Shown: positions 3,301-9,300 of the stretch, one piece after another
Position numbering within the stretch: the first letter of the stretch is position 1
Layout: every line of letters starts with the position of its first letter
DNA from: Ascidiella aspersa
Taxonomy: Eukaryota
Assembly: GCA_963924565.1 (NCBI GenBank)
Contig: OZ004609.1
Coordinates: forward strand, 9,238,001-9,302,000
Length of the DNA stretch: 64,000 nt
Direction: 5' to 3'
Notes under the pieces: model-generated
What the model was told of the DNA's origin: nothing
Database searches by the model: none
The model's input: only the letters and a program-made list of their open reading frames with translations
Made by a program: the position numbers and the translations under genes

Positions 3301-6300
3301 CAACACATCTCTTTTTTACCTTGTGGTCTAATTTTACAAGGATTTTTTTGCCGAGCCGCTTTTAAGAGCGGTTTTTAACAAGTATCTCATTTAGAAACAT
3401 TTTTTTTTGCATCGCGGCCAACTTTTACTTTCTGCATACATTTTCCAACGTTTTTCATAATTCGAAATCCAAATAATATATTACCAATCACCATGGTGCA
3501 AATAATAAAAATAACAGTTACACATTAAAACAAATTCGATTTACTACAGCACTTAAAGAGAACATAAATTAAGCTGCTCATAAACTAAATTCAAAGACTC
3601 AAAGGCTTTGTGGCAACCCTGAAACTGCAGCAGGTCATGGGCCTCCATTAAACTATACTTTTGGTACACTTTTACTACGTAAATACAATTCTTATGGCGA
3701 ACTTTCCTTATTTATCAACGTTGTCCAATCAAGAGAAATAGTTTCAGCCAAAACCGTCGCGCGGCCGCGTAAACTCAGACACGATACTAATTGCCATTTC
3801 TGCATAATCTATAAATGCCAATTAATCTACACGCGAATGTCTTTCATGATTGTGCAATGTGCATGTACAAAGGGGCGCTCGAGTACAGCTAAATTTTGAA
3901 TATTTATTGTAAGGCGCCACGTTACAGCAGTGGGGGTCGCAAGGGGCTGTCTGGGGGGTCACCGTGTAGTATTTGATAAAAAAGAACTTTATAAGAAATA
4001 ATTACTAACATTTGGCAGTATATAAGGAGCAAAAGCAACCCCAGTCCCAAAAATGAATCAAGCGTAGCATCATTTAAAGTTTTAAACGATGTCTAATAAA
4101 AATGCATGAACGCACAAACCGTAACTTTGCTTTGTTGTGCATACTTAAATCTGGTCACTTTAGTCGAATTTCGATACAATCCGTTTAAATTTTACCCCTT
4201 TTCGAATTTTGCCATTTTTTAAATGTGTTTTTTTTACTCTGGTTTATGTATCCATGCACTATATTGGGGGGGTCGCGCAAATGATGCAGGATGCGCCCTT
4301 AAACGTTTAGCACCTTTCTGTGTAATCCAGATGTTGTCGAACTGTGCGTCACGACGCCCCGGGCCTCGGGTGCAACTTTCCAAGCGAATCGCAGTAGAAA
4401 TTTGTTTGTAGAAAATCGTTTTAAATCAAGGTTGAAGCGTTAAAATTGGACGCCATAATTTAGCTTGCTTGGCCGGTAATGAATGTTGTGCAGAAAGTGT
4501 TTTCAACATTTAGAGCTCTGGCACGTTTGGCAAATACCTTAAGCTGGTTAATGAGAATCAACTCAAATGTCCCTGTATATTCTAGCTTAAAATTTTCAGC
4601 GCAGTTTAGCCAAGCTGTACTAATTTTGTTTTAACAATTTCCTCAGCTAAATGATTGCCACCGCTGAAATGTAAAAGGAAGGAAGACACTAAGCGTTACT
4701 CTGGAATACAAACTTAAAGCAGATTGTTGAAGTAAAGGTCTAAACTGCTGAACATATGACCAAGGACTAGGCAGTGCAATAAAAGTGTAAAAACTTATAC
4801 AGTGATATTAGTTCAGTTCAATTGGGGACAAAAACATCTAAGTTACATAAATTTGATACATTAGGCACAGTAAATCGTGTTTTATTTGGTGTTTTTATGT
4901 TAAACACGCCTAATTAAAGAAGTGTATTATGACATAGATTAGTTACGGTATTAACGTAACCGAAACAGTGCCATGTTTTGACAGAAGTGCACCATAGTGC
5001 TTTGTAAAGTATTATATTATATTTATATAACTGCTTTTAACAGAGATTAAAAGACAGGTAAGTATGCTGATTTCAAAAAGGCTGTTTATATGTTTTACTT
5101 ACAAAAATAAGCACTGCAGAATAAATCTGTTAACGCATTTTAGAAGAATTTTGTTAGATCCCCTATTTTTAACTCATAAATCTCCCAACCCAATCAATTA
5201 AAGTTGTGTACAAATTTATCTACTCAAACATTAAAAGACACAAAACGTTGCTTAACAATTTTTTCTTAGATTTATTTTCCATATGTCTGTAACCCAGTTT
5301 TAATAATTCGTCTGATCACCTTGATTCATTAGCAGAACTTTCATAGGACATCAGCTTTAGTTATGTCAAACAACTCAAACTTGATATGGCAATGGACCAA
5401 CCAGGAAAATGTCACAAGTTCTGATAACGATTCCGACAGCGAAATAACGGAACTATATCTCAGAAATAATCGTCTTTGCGACCTGGCATTTTTGCAGTAC
5501 GCGTCGGCCGAATCAAACTACTTAAAGGCATTAGAAAGTCAAAATCTGTCTGACGACACCTTGTCAAGTAACAAAAACAAACTATGCAGTAAGAAATATA
5601 CGGAAACTATTCTTCAGAGTGATTTTCAAACAGTCACGGCAAAGACAACAGTTGAAATCGTCAAAACACAGGACAAGAAATCTAGCCATAATGAAAGCGT
5701 AGAAAGTGGACAGCATAGTTCGGTAAACAAGGAAATACTACAGAAGACAGAAATTTTAGGTTGCCAATCCCATTTCAATTTAAACAAATCTACTCCAGCG
5801 AGCAATATGCCAAGTCAATTCACTTGTGAAATTGGCGTTGCTTCAACAAATGGTAGTGAGTCAAAAGAAAATGAAAAGGAAAAAGATCCATGTGAGCATA
5901 TTGTGGAAGATAACACTATACTGTCTCCAAAGGCAGGCAATGAGTCTTCCAGTGCTGGATTTTCTGCGCCTTGTGGTGCCTGCGCATTGTGCGGCAATCA
6001 CGGGCACCATAAAACAATGGTCGAGGCTATTACCGCACTAAAAACACCAATGGGAAACATCAAACTGCATCAGCAGCTAACCTGCAGCAGCTATGGAATA
6101 TACGTGGTCACTTGCATAGTTTGCAAACAGCAGTACGTTGGAAAAACGGCCTTACGATTTTCAACAAAGTGGAATTTGCATCGCTGGTCCTGGAGAGCAC
6201 AGCGTGGTCACAGTAAAAAAACTCTTTTGAAGCATTACTTACGAAGTCATGGTGACATTCTGAAACGTAAGAGTGACATTGCCGACTGCTACAGTTTGGC

Positions 6301-9300
6301 GTTCGTGGAGCAACCGCCGAAAGATGAGCTTAGTTTGTTTCGCGACAAATGGATAAAGAGGATACGAGCAAAAAAGTGTAACTAAACGTGAAATTTGATG
6401 GTATATGTTTGGTATACATATTTTATGCGGAATCTTCAAAGGACCAACTAGAAGATTGGCTTTTTATTTCGGCAAAGCAATAAATTGAATACAAGGAAAA
6501 ACGTGTAATTAAATGTAAAGTTTTATGTTTTGTCTTTTATCTAAACATTTTAAGTCGTTTCAGAGTAACTGACCCTGACCAACGTTGCTTAAGGATTGCT
6601 CGAAAAAAAAAAGCTATCAGTTTATTAGCTATATGAAGAGTTTTAAAATTTGTTTTAAAAATGAGTAACTGTCTTAGCTGCGCTACTACTAAATGTGGTT
6701 ACTTTAATTAGCCAATTTTTTTACCAAACATGATTTCCGTAAATTAATCAACACTCACCTGACAAACGTTTTTTGACTTACTAAAGGTTTGCAACAGATG
6801 GTCTATTCAAGTGGTTCGCAAAAATGGTTGTTTATTTTATGGTTTAGAGACCAAAAAACAAAGATGCATTCAAAGTCATAAAAGTTTTGCCTGCAATTGG
6901 ATGCCTGTGCTCTTAGCTCTGTTTGGAACTTTTATTTAAAAATTATAATTAAACCTTCTGGTGTTTATTACTTTAAGAACCTGTTGTATTTTACATCACT
7001 CAACTAGTACTTCAACTCATGGAATTATATATATTACTTTTTTTTCTTATCTGATAATAGACTTAAGAAATGCCAACTCCAAAACTTCCAACGTAAAAAG
7101 GTGGGACTTAAAATCGAATTAAAAACTGATGCCTGTGGTTTTGATTTTCCAACTTGGGTTAGGATTAACAGTCATGCAGCATTAAGGAATAAAGTCAAAA
7201 TTCCTACCCTTCCTTTTTCCATTAGGTTGGTAATCATCACAATCACCACAATGTTGTTCTCCCAAATCATTTTCCAAAAGTCATTGAAGGTTGACGGCAT
7301 GGGACCCTAAAAAAATGCATTAAACTTTATATGATAATATCAAAAAACTTTGGGAGTCTGAAGTGCATTTCAATTCAACTAGGAGCAAATTGTTTAAACA
7401 GGTTAAATTGCAAGATAAACAATGATTAATTGCAGTTTTGTTTGGGTTGTTCAACAGTACACTTACATCAAATTTTATTAAGATCAGATATGAACAAATA
7501 TTTACCAGTAGAATAAAAATAGTTAAGCTGATTTTATTATATAAGCTTTTATAGACAATTTACATAATTTAAAATGAACAAGTTAAAATACTTATTCATT
7601 AAAACCAGGGGTTTCTGAACTTTTTAGGCAGCACACAAAACCCAAAATAATTATTTAAACATTTCACAGTAACAAAAAGTCATACTTTTACATTTAATCT
7701 AGAATAATCTGCAATAATCTACAGAAAGCGTTTAAAGATTAATGTGAACTGAGCCAAGACAGTGAAACAGACGCTAAAATGGGATATTTCCAGTGAATAT
7801 GTCGCCCCTGTTACCAAAACCACAAAACACTTGGGGTGGGTGGACGGCGCAAAATTTAAAGAGTTTGAATGCTTCAGTTGTTAAATTAACACTAAAAAAA
7901 ATAAAAAACACAATGCCTTATTTAATATGTGGATTAACTGTGGAATTTGGCAATTTAAAAGTTAAAAAATATAGTGCGTTAGAAGCTAAAGGAAAGCAAC
8001 CCTTCATGGCATGCAATGTATGCTAAAAAAATAATAAACGCAATGCCCTATTAAATCTGTGGAATTGTAAAATAATGTGACTTAAAAGTTGAAAAATATA
8101 GTGCTTTAGAGGCTTAGAACAAAGCAACCTTACCTGGCATGCGATGTATGCTTTTGGCTTCTCATAGCTTGAAACATAGTTTGCGTTTATGTAATCAGAG
8201 CCACGGTGAATGTTGTGCTTGGTTTTGTTTTGGTGCAGACGAACCCTGGTATGGTCATCTATTTAAAAATAAAATAAACGTAACCAAAAACATACTTAAA
8301 AAAAACTATGCAGCGTAGATAGGACGTTAAAAATTGTTGAAGTGGTTTATAAATGTTGATGGCAAAAACGTTTGGCAAAAATGTACAAAAAACTTTAAGG
8401 TTAACTCCTTTTTAGACAGGTACACTGACACAACAATGTACAGTCAAAACGTTTTTGTCCATTTTAACAAAGTTACTGCAAAACTTGGGGTACCCTATGC
8501 AATGATCTGTAATGTAGCTTGATAAAATAAATTGCAAAGCCAAAAAATTGCTTTGATTTACTTCTTTGTGACATTAACTTACGATGACACAGGTTCATAT
8601 CGAATAGTCTTAATCAAGATAATGTCAATTTACTTGACATTTTTGGCTTTACAATTCATTATCAAGCTAAATTGCAAAACTATTGATGCAAATTTGCAAG
8701 TTGGTTCTTCAAAAATTTAGTCATAACTTACAGGCAACTATATTGGTGTATCGATTCTTGTCTTTGTTTTCTGACTGTGAGGAGGCTTCACATGAAGGCC
8801 GTGACTGGGTGCAGTTTTGGATTTCCTGTTTAAAAACATCGTTTAAACAAGCAAACAGATATTGCCCAACTTGCATGGTTTAATTAAAATGGTCATGTAC
8901 TATTGTCTATAAAGTGATACTAAATGCAGCAGCATAAATGCTTGCAATATTAAAAATGATTTCATTGCAAAATGAGACTACTATTTCAGACAATCAGACA
9001 TGGTTTGTGAGCAAATCAACATTCTATGCCTGGGATGGTTAAGTTTTCAGATAATAACTTGATGAACTAGACTTGTTACTGCATATAAATTATGATTGGT
9101 TAATTTTGAAATAGGACCTGGACAGTGTTAATTAGAATGTCTAACTAACACTGTCCAGGTCCTATTTCAAAATTAACCAATTTCCTTATTTTGCCGAATT
9201 GCTCCCTCAGAATTAATTAATAAGACATTGCTGTTTGACCAGAAATAGGTAATCGGTATTGAAATAAAGTGCAGAGTATCATACAACCCTGATTGTAAAT

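What the first reader, a model, noticed from the sequence alone, without database searches (positions are those of the whole stretch)
4400..6484. Candidate domesticated Penelope GIY-YIG gene nested antisense in a phosphatase intron
Seen: an intact 340-codon ORF sits on the opposite strand inside the 4-kb PTP intron (3208-7207). It has host-gene features: a putative first donor CCG|GTAATG at 4476, a 14-nt non-coding micro-exon at 5044-5057, an acceptor at 5269 and AATAAA at 6479. Residues ~200-340 carry C204-x2-C207-x2-C210, G245-I-Y, C251-x2-C254, Y258-V-G and H273. Established: this Cys/His-decorated GIY-YIG is the endonuclease of Penelope-like retroelements, normally fused C-terminal to reverse transcriptase. 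Here the RT is replaced by ~200 aa of Ser/Glu/Lys-rich low-complexity sequence, and no pseudo-LTR or intact hammerhead flanks it. Inference: a retroelement nuclease domain captured as a stand-alone host gene; I do not recognise a described family with this architecture.
Basis: partly seen in the sequence, partly recalled or inferred. Interest (0 to 1): 0.85.

Follow-up and report, generated by a model that had tools for sequence, protein, structure and literature searches.

The report
Zinc-finger-family leader fused to dead Penelope nuclease
A single-copy, intact 340-codon gene candidate inside a phosphatase intron of this sea-squirt genome joins the start of a host zinc-finger gene family to a Penelope retroelement nuclease domain that has lost two key catalytic residues. 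It looks like a captured retroelement domain, but expression and conservation in other species are unproven.

Summary
An intact 340-codon ORF (5363-6385, +) lies antisense in the 3208-7207 intron of a tyrosine-phosphatase gene.

- **Nuclease part.** Residues 197-340 are a Penelope-like-element (PLE) Zn-knuckle plus GIY-YIG domain. It matches a full PLE profile at 99.9% (hhalign), and the AF2 model's top PDB hit is I-TevI. At least 118 other places in the genome match it, none above about 50% identity over the domain.
- **No element features.** The locus is single copy, with no reverse-transcriptase remnant and no hammerhead.
- **New result 1.** Residues 1-32/46, from Met1, match the N-terminal leader of a 12-locus C2H2 zinc-finger family in the same genome. 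A profile built without this ORF finds it at genome-wide E 3.8e-4. The ORF is therefore a host-family/PLE chimera, not a retroelement ORF with a low-complexity head.
- **New result 2.** The equivalents of I-TevI R27 and E75 are Lys and Arg, while 27 of 30 highly conserved columns are kept.
- **Constraint.** Two other individuals show a synonymous excess (8 of 14, P=0.014; N-terminal part 5 of 5). One shows no indel in the ORF against 11 in 2.8 kb of flanks. The nuclease domain alone shows no constraint (3 of 9).
- **Expression.** One sense, unspliced RNA fragment; no splice junction.
- **Not testable here.** Orthologues.

Verdict: probably a captured, inactivated PLE nuclease domain in a host chimeric gene (about 0.5). 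An unselected chimeric relic remains plausible. The scan had separately noted the dead-nuclease idea and acidic-leader ZNF families.

The parts
5363..6385 (+). Intact 340-codon ORF plus stop codon; single copy in the genome
   Evidence: longest open frame of the window. (only one full-length protein or DNA match in the 308-Mb assembly).
5363..5500 (+). aa 1-46: N-terminal leader (M-S-N..WQWT.QEN..SSD.DSD.E) shared with a 12-locus C2H2 zinc-finger family of the same genome
   Evidence: genome-wide hit to C6:9585825. BLASTP 20/46 identical, E 4e-9; a family profile built without this ORF finds it as the 13th and last hit, E 3.8e-4, positions 1-32 from Met1; hhalign 96%, E 2e-9, aa 1-46.
5501..5950 (+). 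aa 47-196: orphan linker, with predicted helices to about aa 108 and then disorder
   Evidence: No match in the own genome, in 1.84e9 protein representatives or in the ESM Atlas. No alignment to the PLE RT/linker profile. AF2 secondary structure and pLDDT.
5951..6382 (+). aa 197-340: PLE-derived Zn-knuckle (C204/C207/C210) plus GIY-YIG fold; the usual 10-13 residue PLE C-terminal tail is missing
   Evidence: hhalign 99.9%, E 2.9e-32, against a profile of 10 full PLE ORFs; at least 118 genomic matches, none above about 50% identity over the domain; paralogues carry RVT_1 plus GIY-YIG; pLDDT mostly above 90; top PDB hits are the I-TevI catalytic domain, then UvrC and R.Eco29kI; relatives continue past the conserved Asn, whereas this ORF stops right after N340.
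6167..6169 (+). Codon 269, AAG (Lys), at the position of the catalytic Arg (I-TevI R27)
   Evidence: Arg in 67 of 72 relatives; the column aligns to R27 of I-TevI; codon.
6341..6343 (+). Codon 327, CGC (Arg), at the position of the metal-binding Glu (I-TevI E75)
   Evidence: Glu in 68 of 72 relatives; the column aligns to E75 of I-TevI. CGC is three base changes from GAA or GAG.
5256..5269 (+). Polypyrimidine tract plus AG, 94 nt upstream of the ATG: possible cis- or trans-splice acceptor (unverified)
   Evidence: Sequence. Family members have similar polyY-AG sites about 35-70 nt upstream of their ATG. The one sense RNA fragment crosses it unspliced.
6479..6484 (+). AATAAA, 94 nt after the stop codon (consensus match only)
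3208..7207 (-). Intron of the tyrosine-phosphatase gene that contains the ORF in antisense
   Evidence: splice consensus, phosphatase motifs either side. (stranded RNA on both flanking exons).

Best explanation
This is a chimeric host gene candidate. A copy of a lineage-specific C2H2 zinc-finger (ZNF) gene family kept its start codon and acidic N-terminal leader. It lost its finger array and now ends in the Zn-knuckle/GIY-YIG module of a Penelope-like retroelement.

The module keeps its fold and its zinc ligands. It has lost the catalytic Arg (now Lys) and the metal-binding Glu (now Arg). I therefore infer that it binds nucleic acid, or PLE target sites, without cutting. In this reading the protein is a DNA-binding factor in which a retroelement nuclease domain replaces the zinc fingers. 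A plausible role is to interfere with or mark PLE integration sites.

Shown: the chimeric composition, single-copy status, loss of the two residues, the preserved fold, and a polymorphism pattern indicating constraint on the reading frame.

Inferred: the origin (an in-frame 5'-truncated PLE insertion into, or template switch onto, a ZNF-family transcript), the non-catalytic binding function, and any role against PLEs.
For: Composition:
- aa 197-337 align to a full PLE ORF profile at 99.9%.
- aa 1-32/46 align from Met1 to the leader of 12 ZNF loci.

Not a mobile copy:
- One DNA and protein copy only.
- No RT remnant in 12 kb.
- No hammerhead by Rfam or by core motif.

Age and constraint:
- The nearest PLE relative is at most about 50% identical.
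- The ORF is a singleton on a 0.73 substitutions-per-site branch. Its sister resident PLE families have many near-identical copies.
- Despite this the frame is open for 350 codons.
- 27 of 30 columns conserved at 90% or more are retained.

Polymorphism:
- In the intervals where every difference from individual X1 is listed, 8 of 14 changes are synonymous against 3.8 expected (P=0.014).
- In the N-terminal part it is 5 of 5 (P=0.001).
- Haplotype X2 has no indel in 5306-6385, against 11 indel events in about 2.8 kb of non-coding flank (Poisson P about 0.02).

Inactivation:
- K269 and R327 sit at the I-TevI R27 and E75 columns.
- The solved chains carry Ala at exactly those positions.
- R327 (CGC) is three base changes from a Glu codon.

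Fold: pLDDT above 90, with I-TevI as the top PDB hit.
Against: - Expression is nearly absent in the one RNA run. There is one sense fragment at about 5118-5375, unspliced, with no reads over the rest of the ORF. Only about 6% of the run was read, and the phosphatase exons themselves reach only 1-3x.
- The nuclease domain alone shows no constraint in polymorphism (3 synonymous of 9, P=0.43). It has also lost its C-terminal tail, as a decaying fragment would.
- An in-frame junction of two real coding sequences yields a long ORF without any selection, so ORF length alone is weak evidence if the fusion is young.
- No orthologue could be examined, because the tools hold no relative of this genome.
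- The leader similarity is short. The conserved P..WL...DF.DF part of the family domain is not kept.
- Differences found only in haplotype X2 were not listed, so a stop codon in that haplotype cannot be excluded. Three gap letters of X1 in 4315-5659 are unplaced.
Confidence: 0.5

Rival explanations
1. Unselected chimeric relic. A 5'-truncated PLE copy landed in frame in a dispersed or retrocopied ZNF-family gene fragment, or was joined to it by template switching. The long ORF is simply two former coding sequences read through. It is not expressed as a protein and is slowly decaying.
For: - Two catalytic residues are lost and the C-terminal tail is cut.
- Nuclease-domain polymorphism is compatible with neutrality.
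- There is almost no RNA.
- The ORF sits antisense inside another gene's intron.
- No upstream DNA similarity to family promoters or 5'UTRs was found.
- PLE fragments with open frames of 150-300 codons are common in this genome.
Against: - Both halves are far from any relative (43% and at most about 50% identity). No zinc-finger remnant and no PLE 3' structure survive nearby. This argues for age, yet there is no stop in 350 codons.
- 27 of 30 conserved columns are kept.
- There is a synonymous excess (P=0.014; 5 of 5 in the N-terminal part) and an absence of indels in the ORF.
Confidence: 0.33
2. A domesticated but still active nuclease. Lys269 substitutes for Arg and a neighbouring acidic residue (Asp328) takes over metal binding, so the protein still nicks DNA for a host function.
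For: - Arg to Lys is conservative.
- Asp328 follows the lost Glu.
- GIY, YVG, H273-R274 and the terminal Asn are all kept.
Against: - Asp at 328 is also present in 29 of 72 relatives that keep the Glu, so it is not a compensating change.
- From established work on I-TevI (my own knowledge), R27 and E75 substitutions abolish cleavage. The solved chains 1LN0 and 1MK0 carry Ala at those columns.
- Only one other sequence of 72 lacks both residues.
Confidence: 0.07
3. Part of an unrecognised mobile element with a stand-alone GIY-YIG ORF, as in rotifer Terminons, or a very rare PLE family.
For: Stand-alone GIY-YIG ORFs exist in Terminons (PMC6431247). PLE families can be single copy in some genomes (PMC3846280).
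Against: - The locus is single copy at DNA and protein level.
- There is no RT, pLTR or hammerhead within the intron.
- The N-terminus belongs to a host ZNF family.
- The catalytic residues are lost.
Confidence: 0.03

Closest known systems
Endonuclease domain of canonical EN+ Penelope-like elements (GIY-YIG_PLEs; RT-EN single ORF)
   Same: It has the same Zn-knuckle (CxxCxxC), GIY and YVG motifs, internal Cys/His ligands, H-R pair and C-terminal Asn. Profile match is 99.9%. It groups weakly (SH-aLRT 82) with two resident PLE families.
   Different: There is no reverse transcriptase or linker and no pLTR or hammerhead. It is single copy. The catalytic Arg and Glu are replaced and the C-terminal tail is missing. 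The N-terminus comes from a host gene family.
Host-transposase fusion genes (for example KRAB plus mariner 'KRABINER'; bioRxiv 10.1101/2020.05.07.082677)
   Same: The N-terminal module of a host transcription-factor family is joined to a transposable-element domain with nucleic-acid-binding capacity, and the element's catalytic function is dispensable.
   Different: Those cases capture DNA-transposase domains, mainly by splicing to transposon exons. Here the captured domain is a retroelement GIY-YIG nuclease, and the junction lies inside a single exon. Function and expression are unproven here.
Lineage-specific C2H2-ZNF family with acidic 'WQWT...SSD.DS' leader in this genome (12 loci; tandem cluster at G000:C6:2.93-2.97 Mb)
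   Same: It shares the start codon and the first roughly 30-46 residues. The coding sequence lies in one exon with a polyY-AG shortly upstream of the ATG.
   Different: It has no C2H2 finger. The second half of the family's N-domain is not conserved. It lies on another chromosome-scale contig, inside a phosphatase intron.
Stand-alone GIY-YIG-like ORFs of rotifer Terminons (PMC6431247; PMC5718144)
   Same: A PLE-related GIY-YIG domain encoded apart from the reverse transcriptase.
   Different: Those ORFs are components of giant multi-copy telomeric retroelements. This one is a single-copy locus with a host-family N-terminus and no element context.
I-TevI catalytic domain (PDB 1LN0, 1MK0)
   Same: Same fold: Foldseek probability 1.00, TM 0.69 normalised to the target. 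The motif columns can be aligned.
   Different: This domain has extra Zn-binding cysteines. Lys and Arg stand at the R27 and E75 columns.

Membership tests
PLE GIY-YIG endonuclease domain | GIY and Y(I/V)G motifs in a GIY-YIG fold | tested here: met
   G245-I-Y and Y258-V-G are present. The AF2 model has pLDDT above 90 and its top PDB hit is I-TevI. Pfam GIY-YIG is only E 0.05, below the cut-off, as it also is for bona fide resident PLE ORFs.
PLE GIY-YIG endonuclease domain | PLE-specific CxxCxxC Zn-knuckle upstream and Cys/His ligands inside the domain | tested here: met
   C204, C207, C210, C241, C251, C254, H273, H291 and H296 all match columns conserved at 90% or more.
PLE GIY-YIG endonuclease domain | Catalytic Arg (I-TevI R27) and metal-binding Glu (I-TevI E75) | tested here: not met
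   K269 where 67 of 72 relatives have Arg. R327 where 68 of 72 have Glu. Column mapping to I-TevI.
Penelope-like retroelement (as a mobile element) | Reverse transcriptase N-terminal to the nuclease in the same ORF | tested here: not met
   tblastn with resident PLE ORFs finds only 5945-6373 in 12 kb. hhalign against the full PLE profile aligns only aa 197-337.
Penelope-like retroelement (as a mobile element) | Multiple dispersed copies with pLTR termini carrying hammerhead ribozymes | tested here: not met
   Single copy. No Rfam match even at E up to 1. No hammerhead core motif in 3200-7300 apart from one chance match inside the ORF, while the same scan finds the core in resident PLE flanks L016 and L019. 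Rfam also missed those, so the Rfam result alone is uninformative.
Acidic-leader C2H2-ZNF family of this genome | N-terminal leader starting at Met1 (WQWT...SSD.DS) | tested here: met
   A profile of 8 members built without the ORF retrieves it at genome-wide E 3.8e-4. hhalign 96%.
Acidic-leader C2H2-ZNF family of this genome | Second half of the N-domain (invariant P, W-L, D-F..F) | tested here: not met
   Of the invariant columns P29, W31, L32, D42, F43 and F46 of alignment A4, the ORF keeps only F43.
Acidic-leader C2H2-ZNF family of this genome | Array of C2H2 zinc fingers | tested here: not met
   No zf-C2H2 Pfam match in the ORF. No ZNF similarity anywhere in the window beyond the leader.
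Domesticated (exapted) TE-derived gene | Purifying selection on the coding sequence | tested here: inconclusive
   Within-species differences: 8 synonymous of 14 (P=0.014) overall, but 3 of 9 (P=0.43) in the nuclease domain. No indel in the ORF of haplotype X2 against 11 in the flanks. No between-species test was possible.
Domesticated (exapted) TE-derived gene | Syntenic orthologues in related species | not testable with these tools
   The genome tools state that this genome has no relatives in the collection. No protein with the N-terminal part exists in the two protein libraries.
Domesticated (exapted) TE-derived gene | Expression as a sense mRNA | tested here: inconclusive
   One sense-strand read pair at about 5118-5375, and none over the rest of the ORF. 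About 6% of one RNA run was read, with host-gene exons at only 1-3x.

The most novel reading that the evidence does not exclude
The first domesticated Penelope-like-element endonuclease. In this reading an ascidian has replaced the finger array of a member of its fast-expanding, KRAB-less ZNF family with a catalytically dead PLE Zn-knuckle/GIY-YIG domain. The result would be a factor that recognises PLE target sites or PLE nucleic acids. It would block or mark PLE integration either as a dominant-negative competitor or through the family's N-terminal effector leader.
Probability: 0.25. Interest if true: 0.8.

Novelty: new variant of a known kind. Interest (0 to 1): 0.6.

Why it matters
Capture of transposable-element domains by host transcription-factor families is well documented for DNA transposases. 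Many gag, env, protease and integrase genes of retroelements have also been domesticated.

For Penelope-like elements I found no described exapted protein. The one paper that looked, in a bdelloid rotifer, reported no strong evidence for one (PMC3846280).

If this ORF is expressed and conserved, it would matter in three ways:
- It would be the first host gene built from a PLE GIY-YIG domain.
- It would be a natural example of a GIY-YIG nuclease turned into a binding module.
- It would link a lineage-specific invertebrate ZNF family directly to the retroelements such families are suspected to police.

If it is only a relic, it still shows how an in-frame PLE insertion can create a long, gene-like chimeric ORF.

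Tried and rejected
1. **N-terminus as degraded RT or linker: rejected.** Neither tblastn nor the profile-profile comparison gave any signal.
2. **Tandem or dispersed element: rejected.** The locus is single copy.
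3. **P0001 as an orthologue: rejected.** This was the best database hit (241 bits, two matched stretches). It is a metagenome contig with a partly duplicated PLE nuclease domain and has no N-terminal similarity.
4. **Protein library searches for the whole protein and for the family leader: no result**. ESM Atlas gave nothing usable for the ORF's N-terminus. For the family leader it gave only scores at or below 0.80, including a KRAB cluster at 0.75, which I treat as noise.
5. **Pfam CTLH_Armc9 match at aa 279-337: dismissed as spurious.** It scores E 1.4e-4 but is below the cut-off and lies inside the GIY-YIG fold.
6. **Rfam for hammerheads: uninformative.** It was blank near the ORF but also blank in genuine PLE loci.
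7. **GC3 as a clock for time since capture: abandoned.** GC3 varies from 0.23 to 0.70 among host genes and from 0.35 to 0.54 among PLEs.
8. **Upstream DNA similarity to family 5'UTRs or promoters, and ZNF remnants downstream: none found**.
9. **Between-lineage dN/dS against resident PLEs: not attempted.** At 48% amino-acid identity the synonymous sites are saturated.
In one search the two phosphatase exons were concatenated inside a local script only to read the frame and base composition. Nothing joined was sent to a search tool.

Full report
**1. What is in the sequence**

An intact ORF of 340 codons runs from 5363 to 6385 on the + strand. It is the longest open frame of the 64-kb window: 350 codons stop to stop, against 164 for the next longest. 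Stop codons occur at 0.061 per triplet here. A chance extension of 195 codons upstream of the nuclease part would therefore have P about 4e-6. Over those 195 codons the other five frames hold 5-19 stops each.

The ORF lies antisense in an intron (3208-7207) of a tyrosine-phosphatase gene on the minus strand. The intron has consensus GT/AG. The flanking exons read '...[10 protein letters not shown]' and '[11 protein letters not shown]...'. Stranded RNA reads cover both exons, with loose ends at the outer borders 3066 and 7308.

So are the donor-like, acceptor-like and AATAAA strings.

**2. The C-terminal 144 residues are a Penelope-like-element (PLE) nuclease domain**

- In the window's own 308-Mb assembly, aa 195-337 match at least 118 other places. 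Over the domain none is more than about 50% identical; the highest figures (50-54%) are for partial matches.
- The two longest paralogous ORFs fetched (L002, L007) carry RVT_1 plus GIY-YIG, so they are ordinary RT-EN PLEs.
- A profile of ten full-length PLE ORFs aligns to aa 197-337 with probability 99.9% (E 2.9e-32), and to nothing else in the protein.
- A search of 1.84 billion protein representatives gave 316 hits, all on aa 177-337.
- An AF2 model with a 39-sequence alignment has pLDDT mostly above 90 over the domain. Its best PDB matches are the I-TevI catalytic domain (probability 1.00, TM 0.69 on the target), then UvrC and R.Eco29kI GIY-YIG domains.

**3. It is not a mobile copy**

- The DNA of 4300-5950 and of 5950-7200 occurs once in the assembly.
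- tblastn with resident PLE ORFs finds no reverse-transcriptase or linker remnant in the first 12 kb of the window.
- Rfam finds no ribozyme, even at E up to 1. This is weak evidence, because Rfam also missed the hammerheads of genuine PLE loci.
- A scan for the hammerhead core finds it in the flanks of resident PLEs L016 and L019. In 3200-7300 it finds only one chance match inside the ORF.
- In a tree of 73 nuclease domains the ORF groups weakly (SH-aLRT 82) with two resident PLE families. It is a singleton on a 0.73 substitutions-per-site branch. Those families consist of many copies with terminal branches of at most 0.07.

**4. New: the N-terminus belongs to a host zinc-finger family**

Searching the genome with aa 1-195 alone gave one weak extra hit, at E 0.004. 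That locus (L021/L022) is a 295-aa single-exon C2H2 zinc-finger protein. Its first 46 residues are 43% identical to the ORF's, starting at the initiator Met (BLASTP E 4e-9).

A profile search then showed a family:
- a tandem cluster at G000:C6:2.93-2.97 Mb;
- members at C6:9.59 Mb, C6:27.47 Mb (two loci) and C3:31.29 Mb;
- open frames of 340-630 codons ending in HTGEKP-linked finger arrays.

As an independent test I built a profile from eight members without the ORF (A4).
- Across the whole genome it finds exactly 13 loci: the 12 ZNF loci, then this ORF at E 3.8e-4, positions 1-32 from Met1.
- hhalign gives 96% probability, E 2e-9, over aa 1-46.

The match has clear limits.
- The second half of the family's N-domain (invariant P, W-L, D-F..F) is not kept in the ORF.
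- No finger remnant exists anywhere in the window.
- aa 47-196 are orphan sequence, with predicted helices to about aa 108 and then disorder.
- Family genes have a polypyrimidine-AG about 35-70 nt upstream of the ATG. The ORF has one 94 nt upstream, ending at 5269. This fits the family's gene structure but is not evidence of use.

Earlier notes of this scan say the genome is a sea squirt. From general knowledge, spliced-leader trans-splicing is common in tunicates. Such an acceptor therefore need not imply upstream exons.

**5. New: the nuclease is probably dead but otherwise preserved**

In an alignment with 72 relatives, 30 columns are at least 90% conserved, and the ORF keeps 27 of them. 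The three exceptions are:

| Position | Residue in the ORF | Relatives | I-TevI equivalent |
|---|---|---|---|
| 261 | Lys | Gln in 67/72 | none assigned |
| 269 | Lys | Arg in 67/72 | R27 |
| 327 | Arg | Glu in 68/72 | E75 |

- A profile search of PDB sequences places the 269 and 327 columns on I-TevI R27 and E75. The two solved chains carry Ala at exactly those positions.
- That R27 and E75 are essential for cleavage is established knowledge that I recall. I did not test it.
- Codon 327 is CGC, three base changes from a Glu codon.
- Only one other sequence of the 72 lacks both residues.
- The ORF also stops right after the conserved Asn (N340). It therefore lacks the 10-13 residue tail of all full relatives.
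- This agrees with a separate first-stage note on 6095-6385 (s1-801960).

**6. Is it under selection?**

No related genome is available, so I used differences from two other individuals (X1 and X2, DNA contigs) laid on the locus.

For X1 the contig pieces 4315-5659 and 5939-6436 report 15 and 9 differences, and exactly that many are listed. The list is therefore complete over ORF intervals 5363-5659 and 5939-6382. I tested it with a permutation that keeps each base change type:

| Interval | Synonymous / total | Expected synonymous | P |
|---|---|---|---|
| Both intervals | 8 / 14 | 3.8 | 0.014 |
| N-terminal (5363-5659) | 5 / 5 | 1.4 | 0.001 |
| Nuclease (5939-6382) | 3 / 9 | 2.4 | 0.43 |

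Four of the five N-terminal changes are at third positions within 28 bp.

For X2 the gap letters of each piece are fully accounted for by listed indels outside the ORF. X2 therefore has no indel in 5306-6385. It has 11 indel events in about 2.8 kb of non-coding flank (Poisson P about 0.02).

Caveats:
- X2-only substitutions were not listed.
- Three gap letters of X1 in 4315-5659 are unplaced.
- The samples are small.

**7. Expression**

Only one RNA run of the species was offered, and about 6% of it was read.
- The phosphatase exons reach only 0.7-2.9x, all with the first mate on +. The library is therefore stranded, with the first mate opposite to the RNA.
- On the ORF's sense strand there is about one read pair, at roughly 5118-5375. 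It crosses the proposed acceptor at 5269 unspliced.
- Two short fragments at 5717-5858 lie on the phosphatase-sense strand, which fits intronic pre-mRNA. They carry the X2-like alleles.

Expression is therefore unproven, and the spliced model is unsupported. The depth is too low to call the gene silent.

**8. Interpretation**

The chimeric composition is solid: host ZNF-family leader, then an orphan linker, then a PLE Zn-knuckle/GIY-YIG domain lacking two catalytic residues.

How it arose is inference. One route is an in-frame 5'-truncated PLE insertion into a dispersed family copy. Another is a template switch of the PLE reverse transcriptase from its own RNA onto a family mRNA. The second route would explain four things together: the single-exon junction, the missing RT, the missing fingers, and the location away from the family cluster.

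Arguments for a maintained gene:
- both halves are far from any relative;
- every trace of fingers and PLE termini has gone;
- the frame, the zinc ligands and the fold-defining residues nevertheless persist;
- polymorphisms avoid amino-acid changes in the N-terminal part and avoid indels throughout.

Arguments for a relic:
- the fusion of two former coding sequences gives a long ORF for free;
- the nuclease part shows no polymorphism constraint and has lost its tail;
- RNA is almost absent.

My estimates:

| Reading | Probability |
|---|---|
| Functional, non-catalytic chimeric gene | 0.50 |
| Unselected relic | 0.33 |
| Still-active nuclease gene | 0.07 |
| Unknown mobile element | 0.03 |
| Something else | remainder |

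The proposed function is a DNA- or PLE-target-binding factor, possibly interfering with PLE integration. This is an inference by analogy with host-transposase fusions (bioRxiv 10.1101/2020.05.07.082677).

**9. Novelty**

Full-text searches for PLE or GIY-YIG together with domestication, exaptation or co-option found no described host gene derived from a PLE nuclease.
- Arkhipova et al. 2013 report no strong evidence for exapted Penelope ORFs in Adineta vaga (PMC3846280).
- The nearest described thing is the stand-alone GIY-YIG ORFs within rotifer Terminons, which are parts of mobile elements (PMC6431247; PMC5718144).
- A large screen of TE-domain captures does not mention GIY-YIG or Penelope (PMC12062965).

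I class the finding as a new variant of a known kind (TE-domain capture by a host gene family), conditional on function.

Other first-stage notes of this scan flagged KRAB-less ZNF families with an acidic leader in the same genome (s1-801841, s1-791055). I verified that such a family exists and that this ORF shares its leader. I did not check whether those notes concern the same loci.

Noticed in passing
G000:C6:2933576-2970652 (loci L026-L031, L033); also L022 (C6:9.586 Mb), L024 and L032 (C6:27.47 Mb), L025 (C3:31.29 Mb): A lineage-specific C2H2 zinc-finger family with 12 loci. Each is a single coding exon of 295-630 codons, apart from one truncated copy (about 61 codons, L032), with a conserved roughly 75-aa N-terminal domain (WQWT...VSSD.DS...P.WL...DF.DF). 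The domain has no Pfam match and no hit in the protein library. Most members sit in a tandem cluster.
   Followed up: partly
window 3927-4248: A repeated element inside the phosphatase intron. Contig word depth is 309-520 against about 40-100 around it. RNA reads in the phosphatase-sense orientation have loose ends at 3931 and 3983, so some copy of this repeat is transcribed.
   Followed up: no
window 4531-4620 and 6613-6716: Two patches of unusually high haplotype divergence. Nine differences lie within 90 bp, most of them shared by X1 and X2. A 102-bp stretch is reported as 'same length, diverged' in X2.
   Followed up: no
L016:3178-3202 (+) and 1049-1073 (-); L019:2355-2379 (+): Resident PLE copies carry an identical 25-nt minimal hammerhead core (CTGATGA, short helix II, GAAA) in their flanks, about 400 bp after the nuclease stop in L019. 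Rfam models do not report it even at E 0.1. Rfam blanks are therefore not evidence against PLE hammerheads in this genome.
   Followed up: partly
protein P0001 (JGI metagenome contig, 915 bp): A 295-aa predicted protein made of one and a half PLE nuclease domains in tandem. It was the top database hit only because the domain matched twice.
   Followed up: yes
window 13492-14208: Another first-stage note describes a foldback with hammerhead ribozymes here. The Rfam gathering-threshold scan of the whole window found no family, which is uninformative given the previous item.
   Followed up: no
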